Origin: Lytechinus pictus
Lineage: Eukaryota
Direction of reading: 5' to 3'
Assembly (NCBI RefSeq): GCF_037042905.1
Contig: NC_087246.1
Location: forward strand, 11,718,001 to 11,782,000
DNA length: 64,000 nucleotides
The position numbers were made by a program, and so were the translations under genes. This document shows positions 36,876 through 57,174 of this stretch, one piece after another (the first letter of the stretch is position 1; every line of letters begins with the position of its first letter). Below the pieces are notes generated by a model that saw nothing but the letters and a program-made list of their open reading frames with translations, had not been told where the DNA came from and searched no databases.

Positions 36876-37559
36876 ATAATTCATACTCTCTCTTTGTATC
36901 AAAGTCCACAAGGCCCTAAGGATCAGAAAGGCATTTAGCACATCTCTCAATTGCTACCTACTTCTCTCTCAGTTCCTGCACAGAACAGAATCACATTTTT
37001 ACCTCATTCATAGGGAATTGTTGACAGGCTACAAATTAAGTAGCAAACATGAGTTTGCAACAAGTGACTGAAGAAATCCGATAGAAACTATGTTGAAACA
37101 AAGGGAAAAAAGATAAGAAGCAAATATTGGCATATATCCCTAATTGGTATACTAATTTGAATGAAGGCAAGCAGGTAAGTACTGGCAGTTGCAAACTAGC
37201 TGGATCAAGTAATTGTCTATGTCTTGAAGTTTTTACCTGTATTTGATTACATCACAGGCAGCCTGCATTCCATTCATCATTATTATGAGGTCAAAAACTA
37301 AGCTTTCAGAATTAGCCCCACCCCCCATATTATGGGGGGGGGGCACTTCCATTTACAAGAGGATATAATGCCTGCCCAAATAACGTAATAATGGTGTCAA
37401 AAACTCTAAAATGCTGAAAAAGGGGTATACTTTTTGTGAGGCAACGTATGTGATTAGAGTCTGATTTGCAAGGGTTTAATCTCTTTCCTAAAATGCATAA
37501 GGAAATAATTATTGACGGGGTTCTGTAGATAATACTTGGTTGTCATACCCAACACTTGT

Positions 37560-38143
37560 CAATGGTCAAGTCCACACCAGAAAAGCTTAATTCGAATAAA
37601 AAGAGAAAATTCAAACAAGCATAACACTGAAAAGTTCATCAAAATCGGATGTAAAATTTATAACATTTTATTAAACTCTTGCTCATTTAAAAAAAACAGT
37701 TGTATGCATATCTCAGTGATATGCCAATGAGAGAGTTGATGATGTTCCTCACTATTTGTTTTTTATTGTTTGAATTATACAATATTTCAATTTTTACAGA
37801 TTTGACAATAAGGAGCCCCTTGTCCCTTGTTTGAACCACAAAATGGGAAAACAATGATATACAGTATACACATATGTTCAGGAAGGAATAATGTTTCATA
37901 TGAGAACAAGGGGAAAATTATAATATTTCATGTAATGAAATATAGAAGAAATAGTGAGTGGATGATGTCATTTGCATACCAATCTGGATTTCAATATGAC
38001 TATTTTGTGAAATTGAGCGAAAGTTTTAAATGTCATAACTTTCTTATTTTACATTCAAGTTTGATGAAATTTTCAGTGTTATGCTTCTTTGATTTTCCTC
38101 TTTTTATTCAAAACAACTTTATGTTGGGGTGGACTTGTCCTTT
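37560..38143. mobile_element. Degenerate MITE of an abundant family; partial copies at ~19350-19465, ~29890-30370, ~34250-34680
   Basis: Ends GGTCAAGTCCAC / GTGGACTTGTCCTTT. The subterminal motif GAAATTTCATCAAAATCGGATGTAAAAT recurs in several copies. Confidence 0.6.
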
Positions 38144-38479
38144 GAGGGTGGAGCAAGGTTATGTAGGTTCTCACATACTTGTTAAAGGATTTTTTTTTTT
38201 AAACTATGGAATCGCATGATATCCATTGGTCAATGGAAGTGGCCTCTGGGGCTTCTTATGCATGAAATTTGCCAATTTTTTAGGGAACACAATATTTGCT
38301 GAAACAAAATTAAAGAAATATCACTGCTGTTGACCTTGTGTTAAACAGGCAAGAATACAAGTCATATTTGGTATCCATATTGATGAGAAAATTGGAAAAT
38401 AAATGTATCCTCCAACTCATTTCCCTTGACACAGCTTTATTTTCTTACCTCATTCTGTTCATAACTAGAGAACATCTTG

Positions 38480-40066
38480 TCAATAAGCCTTATACTGATT
38501 ATTGCGTATATAGTCCTTTACGTTCCTCCATGTGCGGGAACTCAAACATGGTGTTTTAGAGAGAGCAGTCTCAATTTCAGCTTTCCCTGGGAGTGTTTTT
38601 ACATGACTATGGCTGGTCATATATGACCTGAAAGCAGTTGCTACTGCTAACTTTTCCTTGTATGTCCATTTCTGTTTCTTGGTTGCTTTCTTAGACTGCT
38701 TGATTCTTTCCCTGGAAGTTTTCTTCTTTGTTGCATCCTTCTTTGCAGGGCTTTTTGAAGCATTCAGGACTACATGATAGAAAAATACAAAATTGAGTAG
38801 CATTTGAACAAAAGAGTGGTGCAAAGGCGAGCACATAATACACCCGCCTGTAAAGTGGAAAAATTGAGTTATTATTCAAGCAAGAAAGAGGAAGGTGGCA
38901 ATTTGACCTTTGACCTCAAAATCAATAGAATTCCTGAGATCCATGCTAGTATCATACACACCAAATTATATGAGCACTTAAGTTAAACTAAGGGAAATGA
39001 AACCTTTGGAGCAAGTGGGCTTGTGTGGAAACAGAAATATCAAAGAAGAAGAACAAAGAAAGTTTGAGAAAAGTCTGACAAATAATGAGAAAGTTATGAG
39101 CCTTTGACCATGGCGATCACTAATGCTATGGGGATCCTCCCATTTGCAATGTGACAAAGATGTGTGATGTCACATGTGAACAACTTTCCCTTTGATGGAC
39201 TATGAAATACCCCCAAAATGTATCTTTTTGTTCTTTCTTTTGGTGATACAAACTCTTTATCCATAATGTATTCTTTGAAAATCTGTATTACATGCCCTCC
39301 TATAGAAAGAATACATGATCTACTCATGGATGTGATAACAGAGGCAGTTTAAGTGAAATAATATAGAAAAGTAATGGGAGAGTTGTTTACAAGTGACATT
39401 ACACATCTTTATCGCATTGCCAATTAGAGGAGCTCCATGGCATGAATGATTGCAATATTCAAATGCTCATAACTTTCTTATTATTTGTCCCGATTTTTCT
39501 CAAACTTTCGTTGATCTGTTTCTTTGATTTTTCTGTTTTCACACAAGCTTTCTTGTTCCAAAGATTTCATTTTCCTTTAAACTGAAGTTATCGTGTTTAC
39601 AAAGAAAAGTTAACGGACTGACAGACAGACGGACGGACACCGAGCATGACACCATAAATAATACGTCTCACAGGACGGGCGAGTAAAAAAAGTTATGTGT
39701 CGTGACTAATGGGGCGTTGCAAGAAACTTGTGATCAATTGCGAGTCTATTTTCAGTCTCTAAATCAATCATAGGTATTGCATTTAATTACAAATTTGCAA
39801 CTGATTGCTAATCTGCTCCATGAAACAAGGAGTGTAATCTGATTTGCTACAGCTAAAATTGATCAATCAATTGTAAAATTGCAAAAGAATATTTGTAATT
39901 GATTGCAAATATTTTCTTGCAACACCCCCTAAGGCTTTTGTTAAGGTACCCTGTACGTTACCTGCATGGTTACAAGTATTTTGCCCATGTGATTCTGTCT
40001 CATCATCTACAAGTAATCCATCCTTCTCATGATCAGGTGCTTCAAGGGACTTAGCCATAGGCACAA
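38480..40066 (-). CDS. Last two exons (40066-39962, 38769-38480) of the recombinase-derived isoform; basic region plus Myb/SANT-like C-terminal domain
   Basis: Phase-1 GT-AG junctions join in frame to the large exon. The sequence KQKWTYKEKLAVATAF...LPGKAEIETAL..PCLSSRTWRNVKDYIRN matches the C-terminal W..E..AV..PGK..R.W..VK..RN pattern of this protein family. Candidate polyA signal at 38441-38436. Confidence 0.8.
38806..39690 (+). mobile_element. Helentron/pearl-like element with (ACAG)/(ACGG) microsatellite, interrupted by another repeat
   Basis: TGACCTTTGACCT core, GACAGACAGACGGACGGAC near the 3' end, and terminal TACACCCGCC / GGGCGAGTA inverted motifs. Confidence 0.5.
39711..39928. mobile_element. 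MITE
   Basis: Ends GGGGCGTTGCAAGAAA / TTTCTTGCAACACCCC. Confidence 0.65.
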
Positions 40067-40746
40067 CTGATAAAAAAAAAATTCCATTCTACATACTGTT
40101 ACAATACTTAGACCTCTGCAGGATTCAAAATAATTCTATCTAATGGACACCAATTATAAAATGATACATGGACAATTATTTTCAAATATATTACATCTAC
40201 CAAAAGTGAATTATTATTTACACAAATCTTTATCATAGCCAGAATGTTTTACATTCTGGGGTTTTGGTTAGGGTTCATGGTTCTGTGATGCACATAAATG
40301 AATGCCAGTTTTATGGTGATAGGTATTTTCTTCAGGATGGTTATTTCACACACAGTACTAATATATCCTATTTGATTTACTGTATCAAGGCTCACACCAG
40401 GTATACATGATGGATGTTCGGACATAGATATGTAAACTTAGAAAATAATGAAAGATACCTTTCATAACTCACCATCTATTTAAAAATAACAAATAATTCT
40501 ACAAATTTATCAAAGATTGACCCTTCCAAATCTAATTTTTGTTTATGAAAAAAAAACCTCAATAATAACACACCTGGGTCCAGTAACATGTCATGAATGA
40601 TACATTTGACTGTACAAACTAGTATAACTAAGTCGATGGCAAACTGTTTACAAAAACTTATACAAATTCTAACAATTTTAAGAATTAATGTCACATGCCC
40701 TAGTAATTTGATCTGTAATGAGAATGATCCAATTTCATATCTTTAC

Positions 40747-43083
40747 CTTCATCTACAAGGATCTCAGCTAGTGTTTTTCCTGCCATTTCTGGCATTGCTC
40801 CATTCTCCATCAAAAACAGAAGCTTTGACACTTTTGCCACTATTAACACGTCTTCAGGTAAGCCAAAGTCCTGATGGGGTGTTCCGATGCCTTGTCCAAG
40901 AAACAATGTCAAAATACCTTGTTCATTCTTTCTCAAGTTCATCACCTGATAAATGGTAGCAATGTGATGTTTCAGCTCTGTTGATTGGATGTTCTCTGGA
41001 TGTTTTGCACCACACCTAACTGCATGCGTATGGATTGCATCATTCCCTTTGATATGACCTGTAGAGTTGAGGAGAGGAAAGAAGAAAGGATTCTCATCCA
41101 AGACACCTGCATCTGTACGTCTACGTCTGAGAAGATTCATGGCTTCTTTCACACCTTGGGTTAGTAACAAAGGCACTTTCCTATCATCCTCTCCGGTGGT
41201 TTCCATCACCCACATCACTCTGCAGAGCTGTTTCTCAAACTCTGTTAATCCTCCAAGCGTGCTCTTTCCATTGTTTCCTGAGACACACTCATCAAAATCA
41301 AACACTTTAATCTTCGATGGATCACCGGATCGTTTGCAATTGAATACCAATACTGACGTTAAGACCACCTCACTCAATTCTGTGAATGGCCCAGCTACAT
41401 TTTTTATTGACTGGTGTAGGGCCTCCTTTCCTTCCTGTACCTTTTGATTCAAATAAATTGATAGCTTCATTACATCATTTGTGAGAGACGAGTACTTTGT
41501 ACTCTTCAATATTTCTGCATTTTCAGAATGGCAAGCCATTTGATCATTCCATTCATGTTCACATAATTTGATGAAGTTTTTTGCTCTTGTCTCCAAACCT
41601 TCATCTCTGTCACAAACTGCCATTCCAAGGAGTATTCCTCCTGCATGCTTCAATGTATACCTTATTTTCAGAGTGAATGAAAGACTAGGCATGTGTTTCT
41701 TCCCATTACACCCTGCTGCACATCTGGCTGCTTTTACAACATTTCTGAACTTCACAGGGTCAATGACATCTGAGAATGATGCATTTTTCTCATTTGTGAT
41801 CTCCCTGTAGGCAAGTAACAGTCGCCCGATATTGCGAAGTTTGCCTTTGATGTCATAAAAGTGCTCTTCTTCTTGCCCTAACTTGAAAACCACTTTTTCT
41901 GCCAATTTTTTCACAAGCATGTCGTCCTTGATGAGAGCTGACACATCATCTTCCCTCATGCTTGAAAATATTTTATTGACCCGTTCACTTGCATCACCAG
42001 TTGTTGGTAGCAGAAAGGAGCTTAGACTAATCAACTTTTGTTTTTTCTTCTTCTCACCTCCAGTCAGCTTGCTATCCTGGTTACTTTTCTTTACCTTGCA
42101 AGAATGCTTCCATAAATCTGCCTTAGCAAAGAAGCCAAAGCAAGACATACATGGTACATAGTTCTTATAACTGACTTCATGAGTAGGTCTATACACAGGA
42201 ATTATTGTTCCTTTACCTTCTCTTAATACCTGTGTATTGTGATAAAAGTTTCCTGAGTTTCTCATCCTTGTTAACCTCTCAAGTTTCAAGAGTGGGTCAC
42301 TTGTATTTAACCACTGGATTACCTGGGGTTCGTGTTGGTGTTCCTTACAAACTAAATGTCTTGTAAGTTTCATCTGGAGTTTGTGGCAGAAAGGACAGTA
42401 CGCTCCTTTGTCAAATTTCCTCCTTACACTATTGTTTGAACGCATTACTTTGATGTCACAGTTTGTGACATCATTCTTGTCTTCACTACCCATAGTCTTG
42501 TCATCAGACTCCATGGATGTGACAGAATCACCTTCTGCAGCATCATCAATTCCTAATGCACATAATTCATTATCAGCATCACTTTCAGCATGATGTGTTG
42601 TAACATGATTTGATATTGAATACTCAAATTTACTTTTCACTAAGTGCCTCTTGCACCTATTTACTACTGAAGTACCCTTAAATATTGTTGATATGAGGTG
42701 TTCGGTAGTGGCATCCACGGTCAATTCAGATTCAGAATCACATTCTGGTGAAGTGGGGTTGTCAGAATCACCATCTATTATAACAGACTCTGAATCAGGA
42801 TCTACCAGTTCTAGTGAGATGGGGCTGTCAGCATCAGAGGCACCAATACTCCATACACATTCTTGATAAGGTTCCTGTAGAAGTGACTCCGAAACAGGAT
42901 CCAGTTCTGGTGAGGTGGGGCTGTCAGTAGCAGAGGAACCAATACTCCATACACACTCTTGATAAGGATCCTGTAGAAGTGACGAGTGATTTTCAGTAGC
43001 ACCATCCACACTCATCATAGACTCGAAATAAGGATCCACTTGTGAATTGAGGTCACCAATAGCTTCCTTACTGTTTGCTGATT
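40747..43083 (-). CDS. Large exon (2337 nt, phase 1-1) encoding two zinc-binding motifs and a Crypton-like tyrosine-recombinase-fold domain with degenerate active site
   Basis: Uninterrupted 779-codon frame with acceptor at 43084-85 and donor G|GTAAAG at 40746. Motifs YCPFCHK..KLTRHL..H, GNFYHNTQVLREGKG, YVPCMSCFGFF..LWKH, FNCKRSGD, RKVPLLLT, NPFFF, STELKHHIAT, FLGQ, LPE..AKVSKLL resemble animal transposon-type tyrosine recombinases (FNRRRxGE, GKRGRKVPVLL, STKLRKHIAT, FLGH..H..YY.LPE). Confidence 0.8.
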
Positions 43084-43448
43084 CTGTAGATCAAAGACAT
43101 ATACCGGTAATTTGAATGATTAGAATTACAGTCAAATGACCAATACTATACCCAATCATTGAGATATTGCTCATATAAATGTCAATTCATTGTCACGCTA
43201 TAGGAATAGTGGTCACAGTGATTTTTTTTTAATTACAGTTTGTTTAACATTTGCAATCTGAGAGCATTCTGAGTGTTTGACCAATCATGAGGCAAGTCTG
43301 TCTTGCACTTAAAACTGTTGAGGGGCATTTATTTATTTATTCACCCCAAATATGATATCAGCCAATGATCATTTGCACCACGTATGAACACAATTGGTGC
43401 AGAAATAAGAGCAAGAAACAAAAATTTCGATATTTTCAAAATAAGAAA

Positions 43449-44412
43449 GACTAGAAAAGCTCGGTGGGTCGTGCGGCCGAGCACATGTATCCCCCAAACC
43501 CACCGCATCATCCATCATTGCGATATATCGAGCTCACTCAGAAATTATCATGGCAACAACAACCCTGCCCACATTTTGCCTCTGGGTACAAAATTTGATG
43601 ACAACAATATAACGCAGCAGCGTGATCTTTCAGCCACCTTGCACTGAGAATTTACATATAGTTGTAATATTCTTTCAAGTGCAAAATGTTGCCCGGCACC
43701 CATGACAAGGACGCAGATCACAAGCATATTCTTCAAAGCATTTTTTCTTAAAAAGACTTCACACTTTGTACAAAATTAAAATACAGACATTTGCATAATA
43801 TTTTGGAGATGTTTTGGGTAATATTTCAAATGTTTGGAACAATATTGCACATATGTGGTTTAAATTTGGATATGATAGATTGCCCTGAAGTATATGACGG
43901 GTGCCAATAGTCAAGAGGCTCTAATTTTGAGCCTGTTTATTTGAACACTTGAAACAAGCAAGTAGAAAACAAACTACATCTTTTCTATATGTGAACAGCA
44001 TGGTCAGGTACCTTGGAATGAAGTAAGCTTGATACATTGGATTGTCATAGTTATTGGTAACACTCACTTGGATTGTTACCATGGCAATAAAGACCCCCCC
44101 CCACTAAATATGATAGGCATCTTCGCTTTACCTTCTAATATTGCTTTTGTGTGCCAACCATTATGACAAACTGGAAAAAAATGCAGAAGTTACAGGTTTT
44201 ACCAAATTTTCCACAAAAATATCGTTACCATTGCAATCATGTCTCCACCCACTCCAAAATCAATAGGCGGCTTTGCTTTATCATAATGGACCTTCATGAC
44301 AAATTTGAAGATGATCGGAGAAGAAACGCAGCCAGTAGAGCACTCACAAGGTAATCTTTGCGATGAGGCCAAATCCATAGTATCCTCCAAACTCTGTTCG
44401 GGGGATACAATT
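43449..44412 (+). mobile_element. Helentron/pearl-like non-autonomous element
   Basis: Subterminal inverted motif TGTATCCCCC (~43486) / GGGGGATACA (~44400-44409), with a 3' hairpin GTATCCTCC...GGGGGATAC. Confidence 0.55.
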
Positions 44413-45367
44413 ATGTGTATGGCCTCCCACTATTTGACCTTTTTAACCGACAGATGACCTCTGACCTTACTATCTTCATCAAAATAAGTATGGTATTTAC
44501 CCAAAGATCATTTGTATCGACTATGAACAAAAATGATGCCGAAATAAAGAAATAATAGCAAGTTTAACAAAAAATTTAACAGTTTTGTAACAGATCAACA
44601 GGAACATTTTTAAATCAAACCAACAGGAATAATGAATTACTGGGTCTCTGCCCAACTTCGATCAGGCCAAACAACTATAACTGGAGATCTCAGGCAAAGA
44701 GATTTCCCTATCTAGAGTCCTGATGCTATGGTAACTTAATATTCAGCATCAATATTATGGAAATATTAGGGTATCAGCATTTACAACAGGGTATCATAGT
44801 CCTTGATGTTTAAAGCATGGACTCAACAGGTTTACATCTTAAATGGTAATGTTTTATGGAAATATTGTTTCACTTCTGGATGTACGCTATCAATTGCAGG
44901 GGATTAGATCTGTCTTTTGAATAGAGAGTCATGTGTTTGGACCTCTCCTATGATGTGTTTTTCTTTCTGCAAGAAACTTATCCATATTGTGATGCATTCG
45001 ACCCAGATGAGGTTCTACCTGGCAGGATTAATCACTTGAATGCATTGAGCATCAAAATTAAGCAGCAGATCGAGCTTAAGCCTTGGTAATAATAATTGTC
45101 CCTTTTATCCTTTATCTTAAAATCCAGCTTTCATCATTGTTATCAATATTCAAGATTTAAATCTCAACTCAGAGAATTAGTGGATATTACTTTTAGAAAA
45201 GTTTGGGATTTAAATCCTTGTAATTGAGAGTGAATAAATATCTCAGGCACAGAGATTTTTTGCGAGTATGGCTAATCATAGTTAGATGTAAAAGTAGTAT
45301 CTACTGCAGCCATTACGTATGCAACTTATAAGTACGGATCCTATAACAGGCAAAATATTTGTTAAAG

Positions 45368-45414
<47 letters not shown>

Positions 45415-46129
45415 GTATATATATAATTGCATGATTGATCTAAGGTAGATATGAAGTTTGTCTCTATTGCTGCATTTAAATCATTTGAACCTGAAAATTT
45501 ATTTAAGATTTAAGCATAAGTCCAGAGACAGACTGCTCATTGCAAATTCATGTAAAGTGTGTGAATTGTATGTTGATTTTGTTTGAATGATTGATCAAAG
45601 GTAAATGTGAAGTTAGTCTCTACCGCAGCCATCTTGTCTGCAACTAGTTCTTGACTTTTAACATTGATATGGGCCCTGAAACATAAACAATATATATAAA
45701 GTTTAACAGTAGCTTGCAACTAGGCTACAGTGTTATTGTACAGGGATATAAGGACAACTAGTCAGTAGTTTTTATCATTAAAATATCATGTCCATGGATA
45801 CAACTTCTAACTTCACAATTTCTAATCCATAAAGGGAGTGTTTACCTATATAGCTACTGCATGAAAGCACTAGAAATTTACTCCCACTTCCTACTAGATT
45901 TTCATTTAACACAAGGGACCAATTGTATAGACTTTTTCCTTTAAAAATAATCTGGTAAAATGATGACACAGAGTTAGCACAGTCCTGCCAGTGGCATTTA
46001 AGGGATAAAATCCGGTAAAAAATAACTTTGAAGTTTTCTATGGCTAAATTTTTATTTTTGCAATAGAGGGTCCTCATTGAAGAGGGGGAAATACAGATCA
46101 CGGTCTTGCTTAAGTCAGTCATGTCCATG

Positions 46130-46550
46130 ATTTATTATCATCATCATCATCGTCGGCTTCCTTTATTGTAACCATCATCTTCATCAGTCATCCACCATCA
46201 GCAGCACCTTCACCATCATTATCATCAACATCACCACCATAATATCTTGTCATAATCACAATAATTTCTTGTCATAATCACCATTATTTATCATCATCAC
46301 TCATTCATCATCATCACTCATTCATCACCAGCAGCAGTCAGTCATTCATCATCAGCAGCCGCATCTTCATCTTCATCATCATCATCATCATCATCAATCT
46401 ATCATCATTACCATCATCTTCATCATCATCATCAGTTCACAACCACCACCATCAGCCATTGTCATGATCACGATAATCATTGTCATTCATCATCATTCAT
46501 CATCATCATCATCATATGCATGATTATCATAATTATCACCACAATCATCT
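46130..46550. repeat. Degenerate (CAT)n microsatellite / low-complexity tract
   Basis: Long imperfect CAT/CAC/CAG trinucleotide run. A similar short tract lies at 26997-27065. Confidence 0.9.
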
Positions 46551-47634
46551 TTCACAAGAAATACTTTATTCCATGAAAAAGCAGACATATAGCATAAATT
46601 TTATGAAAGACATATTCTGATACAGGGAATCAGCCACCAAAAACAAAGACAATGAAAACTGTCGTTTTTAAACGTACAGATACGCCTTGGTATTTGCCAT
46701 TGTCAAAACACCTGTATGTTCTCCTTAAGATGCAGATAATCATTAATAAGTGGCGGAACTTGTTTGATCAAAGAAAGAATCAAGTTGAATGTAGAGTTTG
46801 GGTAGTCCATTCAGGACCAACAATTGCCCGTGAAAGATACATGGTGTAACGTGAAACCCACTAAACTCTTCTTCTTTGCCATGGAAACCTTCAGAAGTTA
46901 CAAGTTGAATGTCCATCTCTACTAGCTACAATGGTTGATTTAACATTTCTTTTCAAAATCCCTCTGAGATATTTTCACTTTTCTAAACCTTACTCAATAT
47001 TAAAGTTTTGAAATGATTAATTCAATGATATGTAATGTACATGTGGAAGGCTGTATCACATGTATTGTACAAAAAGGTAGACTACATGAAGTATTAATGT
47101 GTTCTGCTTGTAAAATTTTTCTATTAAAAGGTAAGCCAATCCACATTCAGAGTCACTTAAATGAAAAAAGGAAAAATCAAACAAATGTAACAATAAAAAT
47201 TACATCAAAAGCAGATAAGAAAGTGTAACATTTTAAAGCTTCGCTTAATTTCACAAAAACAGAACATATACATGCACATTCCGGTCAGTATGCAAATAAT
47301 GGAACTAATGGCATCACCTAATCATCATTTCCTTTGTATGTTATCATGAGAAATTTAAAATACAATGTTCCTTATTATAGAGTTTGTGAAGTAAGGTTTC
47401 ATAAGGATCGCCATAGTTGCAACCTACTGTCATTCAACAAACATGCATCCTTTGGCTCTAACTAAAAATCAACTTACTGATACATGTAAGTGGAAATGGA
47501 CTTCAACAACATACCAGTATACCAGTGTGTGTGAATGGTAATTTATGTCTGGGACCAACCCACAAAGTCATCTAAAACTTAAAAGACACTTAATAAACTC
47601 CAACTCAAACCAAAGTATGGGGGAAAGATCCCTG

Positions 47635-48637
47635 GGGCCCGTTTCTCAACACCGTCATAAGTCTAACTTCTTGACTAAATCGGAGATAGTGAGCTACTTG
47701 TCCGCTAACCGTTTCACGACGCCCACTTTACCAAGATCGGGTACAACAACCTCACTAAATAATTATGACACCTCCGAACCTGTCATAACTTTTTTCTTAG
47801 TGACGTAGTGGCATCATGTGGGTAGACTATGACATGCAAAAGTGCCAAGAAATTTGAAAATTATAATCTTACGTAATCAATCATAGAGGTTGAAATTACA
47901 TTGCAAAACAGGTGTGATAGATCATTCAATAATAATTGTGATGCACAGAAACTATAAAAACTGTTGGTACAACGCAACAAAGACATTAATTTTGAAATAG
48001 TAAATAATCAAATCAATAAAGATTCTACCACGTCAGGTCATCCATAACTGGACTCGTTGTTTTCAGCCCCTTATCAACACTTTGATAAATTCTCTAATTG
48101 ATAAAATCTCTAATTTATGCAAATAATTTGTCAATTGTGTGTTTCGGTATCTAAACATTTTAAAATTTATGTTAAACTATATTTTGATGATGTTTGGAAC
48201 CATTAATAAACGTATAATTATCATTATTTTACAAAGAAAACCATTTTGGTTTACTTCCGTAAACTATCAAAATTTACTATCCCGGGGGTACCCATCTCAA
48301 CGTTCACATGTGATATTATAGTCATGAAAAGAATTATTCATAATTTTATTTTCTCAGCAATTGAATGCTCCAGTCGTCATGGTTTAAGTATGCATGGTAC
48401 ATATTTTGCCTCTGCTATCATTTTGATTAGATTTATTTCCAAATTAATCACAATAATTGCATTTTTATCATTTGTGACTAAGGCTACGTCTCGTCTGCTC
48501 TTTCCACCGATAGTATCGATATCAAGGGATTCTAGTTAGGAAGCATTTCGTGAAACGGGTTTAGTAAGATTGGAACTAACTCCGTGGTTGGCGGATAAAG
48601 ATATGACTAACTTGTCCATGTGTTGAGAAACGGGCCC
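47635..48637. mobile_element. PIF/Harbinger-like non-autonomous element just downstream of the zinc-finger stop
   Basis: CTG|GGGCCCGTTTCTCAACA ... TGTTGAGAAACGGGCCC|CTG: 17-bp perfect TIR and 3-bp TSD. Confidence 0.85.
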
Positions 48638-48765
48638 CTGAATACATTCTCTATAATATGGGAAATCCCCAGGTCCTTTGCAAGCAACCCAAATTAAAGA
48701 TGAATCATATTGATACACAATTCTTTTGAGATGATGTTGAATTCTGGTTTCATAAAAGGCCTTGT

Positions 48766-50204
48766 TTAATTTGATTCTCCTGTGTGCACACGGAAATGAC
48801 TTTTTAGATGAGATTTGCGAGAAAATGTTCTCTTGCAGAATGCACATTCAAATGGTTTTAATCCAGAGTGAACTTTCGAATGACGTACAAGATCACTCTT
48901 CTGGGCAAAGCATTTCTTACAATGTGAACATTCATATTTCTTTCCACCTATGTGCATTTGGAGATGACCTTCAAGATAATATTTACGGGTAAATCCTTTC
49001 CCACAGAAAAAACATTCATGTAGCTTCTCTCCTGTATGTGTTTTGACATGCTGCTCAAGATCAGATTGACAATCAAATGTTTGTTTACAATGAGGACATA
49101 GATGTGAACATTCTTTGTTGTTTCCTTGGATGCGACGTCTTGGGTTACTTTGATCAGAAACTCCTTTCTTTTTCCCTGAATGTGTTCTCAGATGGCGTTC
49201 AAGACGACTTTGAGTGGAAAATAACTTCTTACAGTAAAAACACTCATGACACTTTTCTACAGCGTGTTTTTTGACATGACGTTGCATATCTGTTTTAAAA
49301 CAGAAAGTTTTCTTACATATGAAACATTCATACGGCTTTTCTCCTGTGTGTATACGAATGTGACATTTTAGATAATAATTACGAGCAAATCGTTTCTTGC
49401 AGTATGAACATTCGTATGGCTTTGCAAAAGTACAAACGTCCATATGATGTTCAAGATCACTCTTCTGAGAGAAACCCATCTCACAATGTGAACATTCATA
49501 TGGCTTTTCTCCTGGATGCGTTCTGTCATGATGCTGAAGATCAGACTGACAATCAACATTTTGTTTACTTTGAGTCTTGCAGAATGAAGGTTCATTCTTT
49601 TCTCCTGCATGTGTTACAAGATGACTCTCAAGATCAGTTTGAGAGGAAAATATCTTCTTACAGTATGAACATTCGTGATGCTTTTCTGCACTGTGTTTTT
49701 TGACATGATGGTGCAAATCCATTCTAAAAGTGAAGGTTTTCTTACAAATGGAACATTCATATGGCTTCTCTCCCGTGTGCATACGAATGTGGCTTTTTAG
49801 ATGACATTTACGTGAAAATGTTTTCGTGCAGAATGTACATTCATATGGCTTTAATCCAGAGTGGATTTTCAAATGACGTACAAGATCGCACTTCTGGGCA
49901 AAGCATTTCTTACAATGTGGACATTCATATTGTTTTCCACCTCTGTGCACTTGGAGATGGCCTTGTAGATAATATTTACGGGTAAATCCTTTCCCGCAGT
50001 AAGAACATTCATGTAGCTTCTCTTCTGTTATTCCTGTATGTGTTTTGACAAGTTGCCCAACAGCGGGTTGAAAAGAAAAAGCTTGTTTGCCGTTTGAACT
50101 TTCATTTAGCTTCCTTCCAGAATGTACAGTTGAATGGATTTTATCTCCACTGTTGAGTAACATATCATGATCTTTCCCATCTTGTTTGTTGTCAATAGTG
50201 TATT
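48766..50204 (-). CDS. Terminal exon encoding a tandem C2H2 zinc-finger array (12 canonical fingers, 1 C2HC, 1 degenerate)
   Basis: Repeated CxxC-x12-HxxxH with TGEKP-like linkers. Phase-1 acceptor TTTTTTGTCTTTGACTTCAG|AA at 50205-06. Stop TAA at 48766. Confidence 0.92.
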
Positions 50205-52443
50205 CTGAAGTCAAAGACAAAAAATAAGGAAAACATCCTGTCACCACTCCAATGACATGCCTGCCATAAGGACTTTCTACAAGCAGGTAAATGCAAATTA
50301 TCAGGGAAACAGACAACAGATGAACTAATACCCAATTGTGGATATGACTGTCAACCCTAGAAGAAAACTGAAAAGCCATACAGGATGCTGTCCTGTAAAT
50401 CCCCCATGGCATCGCATGGAGTGAAGCAGGCAAGCCAATTAATATTGATATTTGACCTTTTGACCCCTAGATGACCTTGACCCCATTATCCTCAATAACA
50501 CATGTATTACCAAAGGGTGATTTGATGCGGAAATAAAGAAATGAGAGAAAGTTACACACAAAAAATTCAAAAAAGGATAGACATGACCTCTTATCATTTG
50601 ACCTTTTGAACCCTAGATGACCTGAGACCCCATCACCCTCATCCGAGATGCCAACCTGAACAAGAACATTTCAGTATTTTAAAGGCTGAAAATCAGTATT
50701 TTAGTAAGAAAATCAGTACAATCACAAAAATACCAAAGGACAACACATATAAACTGAAACTTTAGTAATAAGTAATTTGCATGAAACCACCAGTATCCTT
50801 TCCGTAATAATTACTGGAAACCACTACTATTTGGCACTTCTATCTCATAGACACACGTGTGGTATTATCCAAGGATCATAACAAGTATGAACTTAGTAGA
50901 TGCAGAAATAAAGAAATGAGAGCAAGTTGAACAAAAACATTTAGGAACAGACTACTAACAGACCAACAGGAAAAGTGATAACAGGTTCATTCTCTACCAA
51001 ACTTCGTTCAGGCGAGACAAAATCATTTTTAAAGTCATGTGTCTGGATGTTTAAAAAGATTTTAAAATATATAGGTGAAACTTTTGATAAAAAACATGAT
51101 ATATAATAATCATTTTCATCCGACAAAAGTTGTTGTTTTCACACTTCATTTCTGTTTGTATATTTTTAGATTATGGTAAAGCTGAAGATCTTAGCTTTAA
51201 TATGATATAGGTTTTAGAGTTATTTTAGATGGGTCAGCATCTAGCATTTCATAGGCTAAGTATATTTGAAGTTTGAAAACAAGAATGCTACACTCTGATT
51301 GGTCAAAGAGACCACACAACCACCCAAATTCCAACGGATCCATGCTGGGGCCTCTCCAAGGTCACGCTCACCACATGGTTATCTCATCAAGTTACCAGCA
51401 CCTGAAACCTTATACAGTCAATTAGAACTCTGTATTTTATGCTACTCAGAATTTTCAGAAATAAGAAATCTTGTCTTGTATCTTGATGGGAAAAGCTGGC
51501 TCTTGACCCATCTAAAAGTGCTACATATCAGAGTAACATTATGAGAAACTAGATTTTCAGCTTTCTGATGATATAAATAGTATTTGGGCCAAAATAAGTT
51601 TTTTACAATTTGCAAGATAAATCAGAAGAAAATTCTGTTTTGAGGCATCTGTTCAGGTTTGAAATTCACTCTTTATCAATATATTTTAATCAAAATAAAT
51701 GACCAATATAAAAGAGTAACATTTATCTATAGTACAAAAATAATCAATTTTACTTGAAGTTAAAGTGGTTAAATTTTGTTATGAAGAAAGCCTTGTTGTA
51801 CACGAGATTTTGAAATTCAGCCACAAGAGGATTTGGATAAATCGTACTCATTAGCAGAGGGACCTGCAGTCTGACCGAAACTTACTTGAAAAGGGAAAAT
51901 AAACTATATATACCATGGGCCGAAGACATAACACCAGAGAGAAAAGGGCCATAGCGGCATAGCCTGGATGGCTTATACAGTTAATGAAAAGCGAGAGCTG
52001 GGAAAGAGGATTCATGCAAAGCAAAAAGAAAATCGCCCTAAAAGTGCGCTTTCACACTCACAAGTACAACATAGGCTCCCACACAAGGCAAAAGACTGTC
52101 TTCTCCAACAGATGAAAAGAGAAGGGGCTGAGGAAACAGCTCAACTTTACCAGTAGTGGCAGTCTGACACACATTATCACAATCAACCAATCAAATCACA
52201 AATTAATCATGTCCATATAGACATTTTTAAACACAACTGTGTCAATTTAAAATTCCCCTCTAAAAAGCAAAATTTAGCCAAGAAAATGTTGAATCTGTGC
52301 TATATTGCCAAAGCAATAAAAAAAAAACACACAAAAGCATAAAAAAGGGTCTTCAATGTTAGGGTATCAAAGTAAATCAAGTCCTCAGCCTTAAAAATAT
52401 CAAACTGAAATAAATCTCAATTATGACAGTATGAAATGATATA

Positions 52444-54004
52444 CACTACTCAAAAAAAGTTAAGGACCACTTTTTAAAACGTACATAAAGATTTTATACA
52501 AGGTGTTTTATTTCTGGAAATACCTCAGTACAACTGTCCTAAATGTCCTTAAACACGCTGTGATCAATTTCACGCATGGGTGGTTTCAGTTGTTGCACAA
52601 TGTCTCTCGCATCACTGCACATCCTGAAAAGTGGGCCCCGAGGGGTATCAGCTACCGACATGAAGTGGTAAAAACGAATGTCTGAGTGTCTTTCAGGCAG
52701 TTCAGTAACGAGTGTGACCACCTCCTGCAGCAATAACGGCTTCACAGCGCTGTCTCATGGAGCTGATGAGGCGATTGATGTCTCTGACGTCCAGTGCATC
52801 CCATGCAGCCTCCAGAGCCACACCCAGCTGCTGCAGTCCAAGTGGATGGGCTTCGAGCTGCTCGAGACTCCTCCCCATCATGTCCCAGACGTGCTCTATC
52901 GGGTTTAAGTCCGGGGACCTCGCTGGCCACTCCATACGCTCAATCCCCTGGCCCTCAAGGAACTCGGTCACCACCCTAGCTCGGTGGGCACGGGCATTGT
53001 CATCCATGAAAATGATGTTTTGTCCCACATTTTCTGCAAATGGCACCACTATAGGTTCAAGGACCTCATCCCTGTACCTCACTCCTGTCATTGCTCCCCC
53101 TGGGACCACGTAGAGACGAGTACGGTTGGCGTAGGTGATGCCTCCCCACACCATGACGCTGCCTCCCCCATAACGGTCATGTTCTGCAATACAGGGGTCT
53201 GCAAATCTCTCTCCTGGTCGCCTCCAGACTCTCGAACGTCCATCATTGTGGTCAAGGGAAAATCTGCTCTCATCTGTGAACAGAACTCTACGCCATTGCT
53301 GTCTGGTCCATCTGACATGCTCCCGGGCCCAGTTGAGACGAATTCTTCTGTGAGCAGGGGTGAGTGGGACACACTGAGCTGGCCGTCTGGCATGCATATT
53401 GGCTCTGTGAAGTCGGTTACGGATTGTTTGAGTGGAAACAATCACTCCAGTTGCCGCAGCGAAGTCATTGTTGAGGCGGCGTGCACTGTGAAAGCGGTTG
53501 CGGAGGCTGAGATTCGTCAAGTAGCGATCATCTCTAGGGGTTGTCGAAACTGGTCGGCCACTGCGGGGTCTCTCGGAGTATAGCCCTGTCTCTCGGTGTC
53601 TTTGATTTGCTCTGCTAATGACACTGTGTGACACGCCCATCATTCTGGCTACTCTTCGCTGACTGAGGCCAGCTTCCAGCATCCCTAGGGCTCTGGCTAC
53701 ATCTGTTTCACTTAGGTGGTGTCTTGGCATTGCTGTTGTAGGCAAGTTGTTGATTGTAGAGACTAAAGACAGAAAATGCATTTGAATCCACATTTGTACC
53801 ACTTCACAATGGGCCCACTTTTCAGGATATGCAATAATGCGAGAGACATCATGCAACAACTGAAACCACCCATGTGTGAAATTGTTACAGGGTGTTTGAG
53901 GAGATTCAAGACAGCCATATTCGGGTATTTCTAGAAATACAACACCCGGTTTGAAAATTGTATACACACATTAAAAAGTGGTCCTTAACTTTTTTTGAGT
54001 AGTG
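52444..54004 (-). mobile_element. Full-length Tc1-family DNA transposon (1561 bp)
   Basis: TA duplication. Perfect outer TIR CACTACTCAAAAAAAGTTAAGGACCACTTTTT, with imperfect inverted similarity to ~195 bp. Intact transposase inside. Confidence 0.96.
52702..53730 (-). CDS. Tc1 DD34E transposase, 342 aa, intact
   Basis: Starts MPRHHLSE with a paired-like HTH, then RSGRP, VLFTDESRF, VMVWGGI, FMDDNARAH-...-SPDLNPIEHVW. There are 34 residues between the second D and the E. Confidence 0.95.
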   Translation of the reverse strand: MPRHHLSETDVARALGMLEAGLSQRRVARMMGVSHSVISRANQRHRETGLYSERPRSGRPVSTTPRDDRYLTNLSLRNRFHSARRLNNDFAAATGVIVSTQTIRNRLHRANMHARRPAQCVPLTPAHRRIRLNWAREHVRWTRQQWRRVLFTDESRFSLDHNDGRSRVWRRPGERFADPCIAEHDRYGGGSVMVWGGITYANRTRLYVVPGGAMTGVRYRDEVLEPIVVPFAENVGQNIIFMDDNARAHRARVVTEFLEGQGIERMEWPARSPDLNPIEHVWDMMGRSLEQLEAHPLGLQQLGVALEAAWDALDVRDINRLISSMRQRCEAVIAAGGGHTRY

Positions 54005-55023
54005 TATTAATCACAATTCTTATACGGTATGGTACAATTTGACTTTATATGGGAGTGGGTGATTAACAGTATGCCATTAGAAATAGGACCAAGGGACATG
54101 AAATGTGGTTTTATGGTCCACTTTTTTTTAAATGTGTGGAGGTACATGGGTGATGAGTGATATTAAAGTATGCTTTCCCAGCCTTGGTAATAACCCCCGT
54201 CTTATTACGGTTTCAGGAGACCTTGAAAGAGAGTGCCAAATCACTAGAAACTGGCAATATTATATGATTCATTTAAATTTATTTAAATTTAAACTAAAAA
54301 AATACAAATAAAACTGCCTCTTAACATTACCAAATGATGATTGGCCTTGTTTTCAGAAGCCAATAACATTATTAATTCATTTAGGGATTCCTGTGTACCA
54401 TTTGGGGCCCCTGTTGGACTGATTCTTATCAAATTTAGACTGTGGTTGTTATCACGTTCTGCTGAAATATGAAAATGAAATGATTTGGTACTTGTTGCAA
54501 GTGGTGATGAATTCTTCAGCATCAGTTAGATTATCTGACTCCGTATATCTGAGACATACCGAGACAAAGCTCAGCAATATTTTTCATAGTATTGAAGAAT
54601 ATAAGACAATCACTTGACTTACTTAACAGACATTATTGTAAAAAAATGTATGCTTCAAACCTACAAACATTTAAAGTTGTGTAGACAATCTAAGGACATT
54701 AGAGTGATGTAGTTATGTTATGAACTTTGATTATAAGGAATTCAGCATGATGTTGTGAGTTTGCCCCTAACTTTTTTAACATTATCAATTTACTCTGCAC
54801 TAATTTCATTAAAGAATCTGAATGGACAAGTCTTGTGATGCGTTGTGACAAAAAAACATGTCGCTTTAATAGGCAGAAGACATTTTGTTTAAATTGACTT
54901 AGTACACAAGAACGTTGTCAAGTTTTGTTGCTGTGAACATTATGCAATGAATCTGGCAATGCACTACGCACAATATCAGTACTTAGATCTAACTGGAACA
55001 ATATGCTTGAATATAAATATTAC

Positions 55024-56890
55024 CTGATGTTGAGGCTTGTTCTGAATCTTTCCTTTCTCCACCAGAACTTGTTGAAGAAATAGGATTTGAACTGTCCACT
55101 TCTTGCTTGAGTTTCCCTAAAATAAATTATAATTCTAAGATTTTTTTTTTTTTTAATTTCAGGATCCAATATTATATCCATACAGATGAGATTTTATAAA
55201 ATGTTGAGCAATTGTTACAACACTATGTACGTGTTACTGTTTTCTTCCAGATATCAGTAAGCACTATATTCACTGAAAAGAGGGGATATTTCACAAGTCA
55301 AAATACACATAAAGCCTAGTCTACTTAGGATTAAAGAGCAAATTGACAGTACATTGATAAGCCAGGAGCTGAAATAAAGGAGAAATGCACCTTGTTGATC
55401 TCTTCAGCTTAATAATACAAAAACATCAGCTCCAAATAGAACTATATATTTGAGGAGGAAAATACATTCTTTTTACCATATTACATACACAAGGGCATTT
55501 TCAGAAAGAGATAATGGAAAATTTATCTATTTTAACCATTGCTTTGGAAATGAAATTACATGTTTACACTTTGTTCAAAGACAGGTCCCTAAATAAAGAC
55601 ATTGTAATATCTATATTTCAATCTTCATCTGAAGAAGTACCTTTCACAAACATGTTATTTATAACAAGCCAGTGAGGACTGCATCAGCCTCCACACCCAG
55701 TTTTAGTAGGGTTTAACTCTTAATATGCCATCAGAAAATAAGCTCCATAGACTTTATGTGATACCAATGGGTAACTAGGGCATGATGACATTAATACAAA
55801 TACAATGTACCTTCTCGACTCGGTGGAACAAGATTTTCACAAGTCTCTCCTGAAGGTTCTTGCTTGATGTAGATTTTGGTTGAAAGGTGTGTTACTTCAT
55901 CTGAAATGCCATCTGTGTTTGAAACCATCCCGTCTTGTTCTCCCTTGATGATAACCTCTATGACAGATGGATTTGTTTTGTCGCTCAACTGTATGGATCT
56001 TTTTTCATTTTCTTGCACTCCTTTTACTGATTGGGTAGAATCTTCCGAGTTAGTATTCAAAGACAGCATCTTTTGCTTGACCTGCACTCCTAGGAATGAC
56101 TGAACCCTTTTCTCTGAGCTGGCATTAGAAGGTAATGGAGTATGTACAGTTCCATCTTCAGCCTCAAGCTTGATCTGCACTCCTATGACTGACTCTACAG
56201 TTTCTTCTAATAGATTATGTAAGGTCCTCATTTCATCCTTTCCTATTAGACTTACATGCCCTGAAAAGAGAGAAAAGAGCTTGTTACTTGCCATTACACT
56301 TACAAGAAAGGTAAAGACAAAGGCCATGGGGTTGTTGTGACATTTCACAATTGATGCATTTGTATCATATCGCTCTGCCATTTTGCAAGAACATAACACG
56401 AATCCTAATAACTATAAATGGGAGGAATGTCTCTGGTAATCACCAATGGTCGACTGAGGAACAGAAATAAATATTTTGTTCAAATACAAAGAAGCATTTT
56501 TTGTGATTTCCAAAAGTACAGATAACAAATAATGGACATTATATTTTATATTATCCGAAATGTTTAAATACAAAGAAGCATTTCTTTGTAATTTCAAAAA
56601 GTAAACATAACAGATTGTGGACATTTTGGATATTATGAGGACGACATCATCCTCAGCACATGTGCTCTTCTTTGGGGGGGGGTTGCAATATATTTAGTGT
56701 TGATGAAAACAAGAATATGACATGACAAATGAAGAGGCAACACTGGCAGCTGGCTAAAGAATTGTTATCTTCAAAATTTGAATATTATCCTCTAGTGTTT
56801 GATGATGATACCTTCATTTGGCTTCAAACTTAAATCTGTATTAGTGTGCCTCTCTTCTTTCTCTGGTGCTTCTTGCTTGATCCTGATCAT
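55024..56890 (-). CDS. Shared 5' coding exons (56890/56908-56812, 56260-55811, 55116-55024) of the zinc-finger / recombinase locus; low-complexity N-terminus with repeated psi-K-x-E motifs
   Basis: GT-AG exons all end in phase 1. ATG in ACCAACATGA context at 56890. Motifs IKQE, IKLE, IKGE, IKQE, LKQE. A possible extra small exon begins at 54461. Confidence 0.75.
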
Positions 56891-57174
56891 GTTGGTGTCA
56901 TCTGTAACCTGTTGAAAAAAAAGGCATGAAGGTGAAGCTGATTCAAGGTAAAGAGCAGTGGCAGCTGATTAATGATGATTTCATTGTGTAGATTTTTTAA
57001 TAAAAGTAATTCGTTAAAAGAAACTTAACCACTCTCCTGGACGGATTCATTTTTCCCCCTTTTCCATTCGCAGTCGTGTATTTAGAAAAGGAATGCCAGA
57101 ATAAAGTCTGCAAGGAAAATCGGTGAGATTTATAAATTTTCTTGTAATTGATCTTAACCCAGCCCGTTATCCTG

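What the first reader, a model, noticed from the sequence alone, without database searches (positions are those of the whole stretch)
38480..56890. One N-terminus, two interchangeable DNA-binding C-termini: C2H2 array versus domesticated tyrosine recombinase
Seen: the shared exons end in phase 1 at 55024. Both the zinc-finger exon (50204) and the recombinase exon (43083) begin with phase-1 acceptors and are open from their first base, predicting ~686-aa and ~1117-aa isoforms. The finger exon has its own stop, so the two are mutually exclusive. No CpG-rich promoter is evident between them. Known: lola and mod(mdg4) use variable 3' exons on a common N-terminus, and transposase capture by splicing creates host regulators. 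Inference: an undescribed switchable chromatin regulator, possibly recognising transposon ends through the captured recombinase fold.
Basis: partly seen in the sequence, partly recalled or inferred. Interest (0 to 1): 0.9.

Follow-up and report, generated by a model that had tools for sequence, protein, structure and literature searches.

The report
Dead recombinase gene behind zinc-finger gene
A sea-urchin zinc-finger gene is followed on the same strand by a well-preserved but catalytically dead tyrosine-recombinase gene copy that could be spliced onto the same front end, though no transcript evidence could be obtained here.

Summary
The exon arithmetic is correct. Three minus-strand 5' exons (56890-55024) total 622 nt and end in phase 1. 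Both the C2H2 exon (from 50204) and the large downstream ORF (from 43083) begin at AG acceptors in phase 1, which reproduces the 686-aa and 1117-aa products.

The downstream unit has a real tyrosine-recombinase (YR) fold. It belongs to a very large eukaryotic family with no Pfam model, built as zinc-finger pair, YR core-binding and catalytic domains, then a homeodomain/Myb-like tail. It is not DUF3504.

The window's copy is single in its genome (apparently Lytechinus pictus) and 44% identical to its nearest paralogue. All conserved zinc-finger residues are kept. The active site is lost: K440E, R513K, H539Q and Y548F. An intact three-exon frame with no possible catalysis points to a domesticated DNA-binding protein.

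The central claim, that one N-terminus is spliced alternately to either C-terminus, could not be tested. Indirect clues weakly favour one transcription unit: phase match, an exon that opens at an acceptor with no start codon, no SET remnant, and intron-like CpG depletion across the gap. I put it at about 0.45.

If true, it is a new case of a known kind (transposase capture, KIAA1958 and KCTD1b).

The parts
56812..56908 (-). Exon e1. Acceptor at 56908 and ATG at 56890; the coding part 56890-56812 is 79 nt. Donor AAG|GTATCA. Encodes MIRIKQE...
55811..56260 (-). Exon e2, 450 nt, phase 1 to phase 1. It carries three of the five psi-K-x-E (SUMO-consensus) motifs of the shared N-terminus. Single copy in the genome, no Pfam domain.
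55024..55116 (-). Exon e3, 93 nt, ending in phase 1 at 55024 (CAG|GTAATA). This is the proposed shared donor.
54399..54461 (-). Possible 63-nt cassette exon. It stays in frame only with the donor AATG|GTACAC; the 131-nt version ending at 54331 shifts the frame.
48766..50204 (-). Terminal C2H2 zinc-finger exon with a phase-1 acceptor, 13 intact fingers plus one degenerate, and its own stop. Fingers 1-3 resemble fingers 11-13, an internal duplication. Poly(A) signals at 48437 and 48350.
40747..43083 (-). Large exon of 2337 nt, phase 1 to phase 1. It encodes a repeat-rich acidic linker, two zinc fingers, and the tyrosine-recombinase core-binding and catalytic domains. The active site is lost (K440E, R513K, H539Q, Y548F in the numbering of the 602-aa core, window:40703-42508).
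39962..40066 (-). 105-nt linker exon, phase 1 to phase 1. The paralogue on C21 has an exon at the equivalent place.
38480..38769 (-). Last exon: a basic stretch plus a three-helix homeodomain/Myb-like tail that is conserved across the family (W34, P60, K62, L75, R78, W80 and K84 all kept), then the stop.
37000..57000 (.). Continuous CpG-depleted block (o/e 0.15-0.55) whose edges coincide with e1 and with about 1.4 kb past the recombinase stop. The flanks are at 0.77 (15-37 kb) and 0.94 (57-64 kb).

Best explanation
SHOWN: the locus holds a C2H2 zinc-finger gene, made of small 5' exons rich in SUMO-consensus motifs plus one large finger exon. 5.7 kb downstream on the same strand lies a three-exon unit. 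It encodes a catalytically dead member of a large eukaryotic family built as zinc-finger pair, tyrosine recombinase, then homeodomain/Myb-like tail.

This copy arose by DNA-level duplication, because the introns are retained. It lacks the SET-domain front end of its closest paralogues. It kept its DNA-binding parts and lost the nucleophile tyrosine and its partner residues.

INFERRED: the protein works as a non-catalytic DNA-binding or chromatin factor, like other dead recombinase derivatives.

INFERRED, NOT SHOWN: the big exon is an internal-type exon. It opens at an acceptor and has no start codon at its edge. It is therefore supplied by the only in-phase upstream coding exons, those of the zinc-finger gene. 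That gives two alternative last-exon isoforms: N-terminus plus 13 fingers (686 aa), or N-terminus plus dead recombinase module (1117 aa). The choice would be made by use or skipping of the finger exon and its poly(A) sites.

The confidence given is for this whole model including the splice link. For 'domesticated dead recombinase-fold gene' alone I would say about 0.85.
For: Fold:
- AlphaFold2 model with mean pLDDT 80.
- The top Foldseek PDB hits are Cre, XerD, XerA and XerH.
- The top 30 Swiss-Prot AFDB hits are all XerC/D/S, over query residues 172-580, best E 7e-4.
- VIA-align gives Z 9.9 to the XerD catalytic domain, 162 residues at 3.3 A.
- PF00589 hits 4 of 34 relatives.

Family: 4909 clusters at E<=1e-3. 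The consensus motifs are FNRRRxGE, GKRGRxVPV, LRKH and GHDIRVHRExYRLP.

Loss of catalysis with retention of the rest:
- 67 of 87 highly conserved columns are kept: zinc fingers 18/18, core-binding 12/15, catalytic 37/54.
- The losses fall at K440E, R513K, H539Q, H544P, R545H, Y548F and R549G.
- All invariant residues of the tail are kept, and its fold is homeodomain/Myb-like.

Gene status:
- Single diverged copy; the best paralogue is 44% identical.
- The intron positions and the 3' three-exon layout are shared with the C21 paralogue.

Splice link:
- Phase 1 at the donor and at both acceptors.
- An in-frame stop lies immediately upstream of the 43083 acceptor, and the first Met is about 22 codons in.
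- There is no SET remnant or other coding exon in 43-57 kb.
- CpG o/e of the gap without the repeat is 0.36, like the introns (0.26-0.28) and unlike the flanks (0.77-0.94).
- Runs X2 and X8 hold both e2 and the recombinase exon.
- Every known domesticated YR gene is fused to host-derived parts (PMC3212892).
Against:
- The runs holding the exons are only guessed to be RNA.
- Each phase match has about a 1/3 chance probability.
- The 43083 acceptor has a weaker pyrimidine tract than the finger exon's acceptor, which would have to be skipped along with its poly(A) signals.
- CpG depletion is also seen at paralogous loci, including broken copies. It is noisy at the C21 paralogue, so it is weak evidence.
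- No protein of 1117 aa, 686 aa or any other length from this locus is in the databases searched, although the C21 paralogue's protein from the same genome is.
- No orthologue above 46% identity was found in any other species, so conservation of the arrangement is unknown.
- The RefSeq model of the C21 paralogue starts at an internal Met of its big exon, which shows that a stand-alone reading is possible.
Confidence: 0.45

Rival explanations
1. Two separate genes in tandem. The dead-recombinase unit has its own promoter and a short, possibly non-coding, first exon somewhere in 43.1-48.7 kb. Alternatively its TSS lies just upstream of 43083, and translation starts at the Met pair in ESMMS, giving about 890 aa. 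On this reading the phase match with the zinc-finger gene is coincidence.
For: - In-frame Met codons lie about 22 codons into the exon.
- The RefSeq protein of the closest paralogue (P0001) starts at an internal Met of its big exon.
- Another degenerate family member, P0003 in L. variegatus, is an ordinary multi-exon gene with its own N-terminal exons.
- The phase match has a 1/3 chance probability.
- The CpG-rich 1-kb repeat at 47631-48641 could act as a promoter.
- Tandem same-strand genes are far commoner than alternative last-exon fusions (general knowledge).
Against: - No coding-looking ORF lies in the gap.
- The gap has intron-like CpG depletion of 0.36, against 0.77-0.94 in the non-genic flanks.
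- The open frame starts exactly at a consensus acceptor, as for an internal exon.
- No stand-alone protein of about 890 aa is present in the databases.
Confidence: 0.35
2. A decaying relic. The recombinase unit is a duplicated gene copy or old element that lost its 5' part and its catalytic residues. It is no longer translated, and its open frame is a leftover.
For: - The active site is destroyed.
- The SET front end of the paralogues is missing.
- No annotated protein and no orthologue were found.
- Several other family copies in this genome carry stops.
Against: - 779 codons in one exon plus two further exons are all in frame, with intact splice sites, at only 44% identity to the nearest relative.
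- The losses are not random. Zinc-finger columns are kept 18/18 and the tail invariants 7/7, while the losses cluster at the active site.
- The exon is held at 0.87-0.99 of its words in eight small assemblies from two studies that are probably RNA.
Confidence: 0.1
3. The 5' exons e1-e3 serve only one of the two downstream units. One version has them as the front end of the recombinase unit alone, with the finger exon belonging to another transcript. Another version has further unseen coding exons upstream of e1 that change both products.
For: - e1 has an acceptor at 56908 and an open frame for 6 codons before the ATG.
- Neither a 686-aa nor an 1117-aa protein is in the databases.
- The finger exon's link to 55024 is as untested as the other.
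Against: - The finger exon has no start codon before its first finger other than one internal Met, and it has a strong phase-1 acceptor.
- No coding-looking ORF lies in 57-64 kb, which is CpG-rich like a promoter region.
Confidence: 0.1

Closest known systems
Crypton-derived DUF3504 genes (KIAA1958 isoforms a/b, KCTD1 isoform b, ZMYM2/3/4, QRICH1, WOC; the ATF7IP intronic copy in birds), PMC3212892
   Same: A tyrosine-recombinase domain has lost its catalytic residues and is kept as part of a nuclear regulator. KIAA1958 is predicted to swap two different dead-recombinase 3' exons on a common front end. KCTD1b arose when an element landed next to a host gene and created a new transcript variant. 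For ATF7IP, the fusion by alternative splicing was likewise predicted without cDNA support.
   Different: The sequence family differs. There is no PF12012 match in the window's copy or in 34 relatives, and hhalign gives a probability of 0.1%. This family also carries an N-terminal zinc-finger pair and a C-terminal homeodomain/Myb-like tail. Here the alternative partner would be a C2H2 array rather than a second recombinase domain. No orthologues are known.
Host-transposase fusion genes formed by transposase capture through alternative splicing (bioRxiv 10.1101/2020.05.07.082677)
   Same: A transposon-type ORF lies downstream of host exons. It has an acceptor in frame with a host donor, and the host N-terminal regulatory region would be joined to a TE-derived DNA-binding module.
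   Different: The documented cases involve DDE-type transposases in vertebrates and have transcript support. Here the module is a tyrosine recombinase in a sea urchin, and the fusion transcript is unproven. This copy also looks like a gene duplicate with retained introns rather than a fresh insertion.
Drosophila lola / mod(mdg4) (from my own knowledge)
   Same: Common 5' exons would be joined to alternative 3' exons that encode different DNA-binding modules.
   Different: Those genes share a BTB domain and have dozens of zinc-finger or FLYWCH 3' exons, and mod(mdg4) uses trans-splicing. Here the shared exons have no recognisable domain, and there are at most two alternatives.
Yeast Ndc10/Cbf2 and Gcr1, derived from CryptonF (PMC3212892; the structural role of Ndc10 is from my own knowledge)
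   Same: A dead tyrosine-recombinase fold is retained and used for DNA binding rather than recombination.
   Different: They are fungal, of a different Crypton lineage, carry a GCR1_C domain and involve no alternative splicing.
SET-repeat-ZnF-YR-Myb paralogues in the same genome (C21, which encodes LOC129278875 of L. pictus, and C10)
   Same: [quoted passage not shown] They are 43-44% identical to the window's copy.
   Different: The paralogues keep the catalytic R, K, R, H and Y and carry a SET domain upstream. The window's copy has neither.

Membership tests
Tyrosine recombinase superfamily | Two-domain fold: a helical core-binding domain plus a catalytic domain | tested here: met
   All top structural matches are Cre, Xer, lambda Int or topoisomerase IB. 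Foldseek against AFDB Swiss-Prot gives E 7e-4 over residues 172-580. VIA-align gives Z 9.9 to the XerD catalytic domain.
Tyrosine recombinase superfamily | Catalytic residues R-K-(H)-R-H/W-Y, including the nucleophile tyrosine | tested here: not met
   The family consensus has them, with XerD-like spacing. The window's copy keeps only the first Arg (R393) and has K440E, R513K, H539Q and Y548F. The residue mapping rests on motif position, spacing and the model's secondary structure, not on a residue-level superposition.
Tyrosine recombinase superfamily | Sequence-profile match to Pfam PF00589 | tested here: not met
   The window's copy has no hit at E<=0.1. 4 of 34 relatives hit, best E 5.4e-6.
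DUF3504 / CryptonA-derived domesticated genes | Match to PF12012 (DUF3504) | tested here: not met
   There is no hit in the window's copy or in 34 relatives. hhalign of the family profile against DUF3504 regions gives a probability of 0.1%.
DUF3504 / CryptonA-derived domesticated genes | Recombinase-derived domain without a complete catalytic tetrad, in an otherwise intact gene | tested here: met
DUF3504 / CryptonA-derived domesticated genes | Orthologues conserved across species under purifying selection | tested here: inconclusive
   No protein above 46% identity was found in 1.84 billion representatives, and none in the word-indexed search. Eukaryotic genomes of relatives cannot be searched with these tools.
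Host-transposase fusion gene (capture by splicing) | A TE-type ORF preceded by an acceptor that is in frame with an upstream host donor | tested here: met
   The donor at 55024 and the acceptor at 43083 are both phase 1, and the joined frame is open for 1117 aa.
Host-transposase fusion gene (capture by splicing) | A fusion transcript is observed | not testable with these tools
There are no protein fragments in the databases and no retrocopy of either junction.
lola / mod(mdg4)-type loci | Common exons encode a BTB/POZ domain | tested here: not met
   The e2 ORF has no Pfam family. It is single copy with no paralogues.
C2H2 zinc-finger transcription factor | Tandem C2H2 fingers with TGEKP-type linkers | tested here: met
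   PF00096 scores E 9e-49 and PF13465 scores E 3e-62. A pattern search finds 13 intact fingers.

The most novel reading that the evidence does not exclude
One sea-urchin gene uses mutually exclusive last-exon sets to place either a 13-finger C2H2 array or a complete but catalytically dead zinc finger-tyrosine recombinase-homeodomain-like module on the same SUMO-motif-rich N-terminus. That would retarget a common regulatory domain between two unrelated modes of DNA recognition. The recombinase module comes from a large recombinase lineage without a Pfam model, whose other members are fused to SET or BRCT domains.
Probability: 0.4. Interest if true: 0.65.

Novelty: new member of a known kind. 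Interest (0 to 1): 0.45.

Why it matters
If the splice link is real, this would be an invertebrate example of exon capture of a tyrosine recombinase rather than a DDE transposase. It would create a factor that switches between two unrelated DNA-binding modules. It would also be an independent domestication of a recombinase lineage other than DUF3504.

Even without the link, two things are worth recording.
- The family is very large: 4909 clusters at 50% identity across chordates, arthropods, cnidarians and echinoderms. It has no Pfam model, keeps its catalytic residues in most members, and recurs with SET and BRCT domains.
- The window's copy shows a clean signature of exaptation. Its DNA-binding parts are fully conserved and its active site is erased, which makes it a good candidate for ChIP/CUT&RUN in a tractable model urchin.

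Tried and rejected
No read evidence was possible after that.
2. I looked for annotated or assembled proteins from this locus, using the whole recombinase ORF, the finger exon and the first 170 aa of the recombinase exon. No own-locus protein or fragment turned up. The exhaustive HMMER search also found nothing above 46% identity. This absence is not informative about splicing, because database coverage of this species is unclear. The C21 paralogue's protein is present at 100% identity.
3. A search for a genomic retrocopy of either spliced junction, with 32-mers and up to 3 mismatches, found none.
4. A DUF3504/CryptonA relationship was rejected at the sequence level.
5. A search for a remnant of the paralogues' SET domain upstream of 43083 found none, even at E 50.
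6. The idea that the 43083 acceptor is a duplicate of the 50204 acceptor, since they share TGTCTTTGA...CAGAAT, was rejected. The alignment shows no homology.
7. The idea that the unit is a young multi-copy transposon was rejected. The family is low-copy and deeply diverged in this genome. The only high-copy DNA in the gap is a 1-kb repeat.
8. Direct sequence search of PDB, with the single sequence and with the profile, gave nothing useful beyond zinc-finger noise.
9. An Atlas search with the tail exon found no named cluster.
10. CpG profiling of the C21 paralogue as a calibrator was too noisy to sharpen the promoter argument.


Full report
WHAT IS THERE

The window is AT-rich animal DNA (36% G+C). 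A paralogous locus of the same assembly encodes a stretch 100% identical to residues 426-1016 of LOC129278875 of Lytechinus pictus. The genome is therefore that sea urchin or something indistinguishable from it. It has 811.7 Mb in 368 contigs, and the window is C2:11718001-11782000. Everything of interest lies on the minus strand.

CHECK OF THE OBSERVATION

I read the splice contexts and rebuilt the coding sequences.
- Exons e1 (56890-56812), e2 (56260-55811) and e3 (55116-55024) sum to 622 nt, so they end in phase 1.
- The zinc-finger exon starts at 50204 behind ...ttgacttcag. It enters at codon position 2 and runs to a stop at 48766. This gives 686 aa with 13 intact C2H2 fingers.
- The large ORF starts at 43083 behind ...gatctacag, again at codon position 2. 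An in-frame TGA sits immediately upstream.
- With the donor after 40747, a 105-nt exon (40066-39962) and a last exon (38769-38480), the product is exactly 1117 aa.

On its own it is weak, because each phase match has about a one-in-three chance.

WHAT THE DOWNSTREAM UNIT IS

Pfam finds nothing in the 779-aa ORF. An exhaustive HMMER search finds 4909 clusters at E<=1e-3 and 808 at E<=1e-30.

An alignment of 34 core regions (A1) shows this layout:
- two zinc-binding motifs;
- a helical region;
- a C-terminal region with the motifs FNRRRxGE, GKRGRxVPV, LRKH and GHDIRVHRExYRLP.

That is the arginine, hairpin lysine, arginine, histidine and tyrosine of tyrosine recombinases. The His-to-Tyr spacing of 9 residues matches what I recall for XerD.

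Several results agree on the fold.
- Four of the 34 relatives hit PF00589.
- The AlphaFold2 model of the window's core has mean pLDDT 80.
- Its best PDB matches are Cre, XerD, XerA and XerH.
- The top 30 Swiss-Prot models are all XerC/D/S over residues 172-580.
- VIA-align gives Z 9.9 to the XerD catalytic domain, followed by other recombinases and type IB topoisomerases.

The last exon encodes a tail that is conserved across the family. It folds as a three-helix homeodomain/Myb-like domain. The E-values are weak, but every hit is of that kind.

The family shows no profile similarity to DUF3504, so it is a different recombinase lineage from the known domesticated Cryptons.

THE COPY IS CATALYTICALLY DEAD BUT OTHERWISE PRESERVED

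87 columns are at least 85% conserved in the other 33 sequences. The window's copy keeps 67 of them:
- all 18 in the zinc-finger region;
- 12 of 15 in the core-binding region;
- 37 of 54 in the catalytic region.

The losses fall on K440E, R513K, H539Q, H544P, R545H, Y548F and R549G, and no tyrosine lies nearby. The segment that should carry the nucleophile is the only low-confidence stretch inside the catalytic domain of the model (residues 533-550).

All seven invariant residues of the tail are kept. The frame is open over three exons. The exon layout of big exon, short exon and tail exon is the same as in the paralogue on C21.

The copy is unique in the genome. The nearest relatives are 44% and 43% identical, and the family is low-copy and deeply diverged, with several broken members.

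A neutral relic at this divergence would not keep about 900 codons open and lose conserved residues only around the active site. I therefore read it as a domesticated, non-catalytic DNA-binding protein (confidence about 0.85).

Another degenerate member is P0003 of L. variegatus, which has LKNH and no tyrosine. It is an ordinary multi-exon gene with unrelated N-terminal exons. This shows that such domestications occur in this family.

WHERE THE FRONT END COMES FROM

The two closest paralogues carry the C-terminal half of a SET domain and tandem repeats in the same big exon, with the first SET half in an upstream exon. SET recurs elsewhere in the family (P0128, P0131, P0136), and one member has BRCT domains.

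The window's copy has repeats and an acidic stretch but no SET. No SET remnant exists anywhere in 43-57 kb.

Its big exon still looks like an internal exon. It opens at an acceptor and has no Met for about 22 codons. Something upstream probably supplies the start. The only coding-looking, in-phase exons upstream on this strand are e1-e3, and e2 is single copy.

The shared 207 aa have no Pfam domain but carry five psi-K-x-E motifs. That pattern is typical of SUMO-dependent repression regions (my inference).

THE SPLICE LINK COULD NOT BE TESTED

- The two run searches show only that e2 and the recombinase exon are held, at 0.81-0.99 of their words, in small assemblies of two studies. Runs X2 and X8 hold both. 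The kind of these runs is only guessed to be RNA.
- No protein or fragment from this locus is in the protein collections.
- No retrocopy carries either junction.

One indirect clue comes from CpG content. CpG observed/expected is 0.15-0.55 from about 37 to 57 kb, and the block's edges fall at e1 and about 1.4 kb past the recombinase stop. The flanks are at 0.77 and 0.94. The 4.5 kb between the finger exon and 43083, without a young 1-kb repeat, is at 0.36, like the introns. In animals with gene-body methylation this is what an intron looks like, not an intergenic promoter.

However, other family loci, including broken ones, are also depleted, and the C21 paralogue gives a noisy profile. I count this as weak support.

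VERDICT

- The 'domesticated tyrosine recombinase' part is supported and sharpened: dead active site, intact zinc fingers and tail, and a new lineage distinct from DUF3504.
- The 'one N-terminus, two C-termini' part remains a frame-compatible hypothesis. I put it at about 0.45. A separate gene gets about 0.35. A decaying relic and other exon assignments get about 0.1 each.

COMPARISON WITH WHAT IS KNOWN

Kojima and Jurka (PMC3212892) described:
- dead Crypton recombinase domains in KCTD1b, KIAA1958, ZMYM2-4 and QRICH1;
- KIAA1958 with two alternative recombinase-derived exon sets;
- an intronic copy in avian ATF7IP that was predicted, without cDNA, to be alternatively spliced.

Cosby and colleagues (bioRxiv 10.1101/2020.05.07.082677) showed that capture of transposase ORFs by alternative splicing is a recurrent route to new transcription factors.

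The present case would be a new member of that kind, from another recombinase lineage, in an echinoderm, and with a C2H2 array as the alternative partner.

EARLIER NOTES OF THIS SCAN

Two unchecked first-reader notes bear on this. One describes a SET-repeat-ZnF-YR-Myb gene elsewhere in this genome, which agrees with what I saw at C21 and C10. The other describes a catalytically stripped Crypton recombinase 2.78 Mb away on the same chromosome.

Noticed in passing
window:52441-54007: A Tc1/mariner element lies in the intron between e3/e4 and the finger exon, in the same orientation. It has roughly 200-nt inverted ends (52441-52638 and 53811-54007). Its frame is open over 421 codons and carries HTH_Tnp_Tc3_2 and DDE_3 domains. 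It is GC-rich (50%) against the 35% background.
   Followed up: partly
window:47631-48641: A high-copy repeat of about 1 kb sits just downstream of the finger exon's stop. At least 40 copies at 83-90% identity are spread over many chromosomes, and 7297 first-look candidates were found. Its CpG o/e is 0.96 inside an otherwise CpG-poor block. The finger exon's poly(A) signals (48437 and 48350) lie inside it.
   Followed up: partly
L002 (G000:C21:10271696-10276480), L003 (G000:C10:30238658-30243343); L017: The closest paralogues encode the second half of a SET domain, tandem peptide repeats, and then the zinc finger-recombinase core in a single exon, with the catalytic residues intact. The first SET half lies in an upstream exon (C21:10277255-10277410) that the public protein model P0001 omits. 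The C10 copy has one in-frame TAA stop. SET plus this recombinase core recurs in P0128, P0131 and P0136, and P0137 has BRCT domains instead.
   Followed up: partly
protein family of window:40703-42508:-: The zinc finger-recombinase-tail family is very large: 4909 clusters at 50% identity with E<=1e-3. Atlas taxa include Chordata, Arthropoda and Cnidaria. It has no Pfam model of its own. Most members keep the catalytic motif set, which suggests a widespread, little-described recombinase element or gene family.
   Followed up: partly
window:38990-39577: A foldback or MITE-like element lies in the intron before the last exon. It has two arm pairs, 38990-39075/39492-39577 and 39077-39193/39373-39489, that are 82-85% complementary.
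   Followed up: no
window:48766-50204: The finger array shows an internal duplication. Fingers 1-3 closely resemble fingers 11-13, and fingers 4-5 resemble 8-9. One finger between positions 5 and 6 has decayed.
   Followed up: no
window:1-15000 and 15001-37000: A second CpG-depleted block (o/e about 0.41) covers 1-15 kb and probably marks another methylated gene body. 15-37 kb is CpG-normal (0.77), with peaks at 15-17 and 19-22 kb.
   Followed up: no
L014 (L. variegatus CM031020.1:30315825-30355878): LOC121417348 (P0003) is another family member with a degenerate active site (LKNH, and the tyrosine segment deleted). It is split into at least 8 coding exons over 20 kb, and its Q-rich N-terminal exons contain an IIKEE motif. 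Its gene body is not strongly CpG-depleted.
   Followed up: partly
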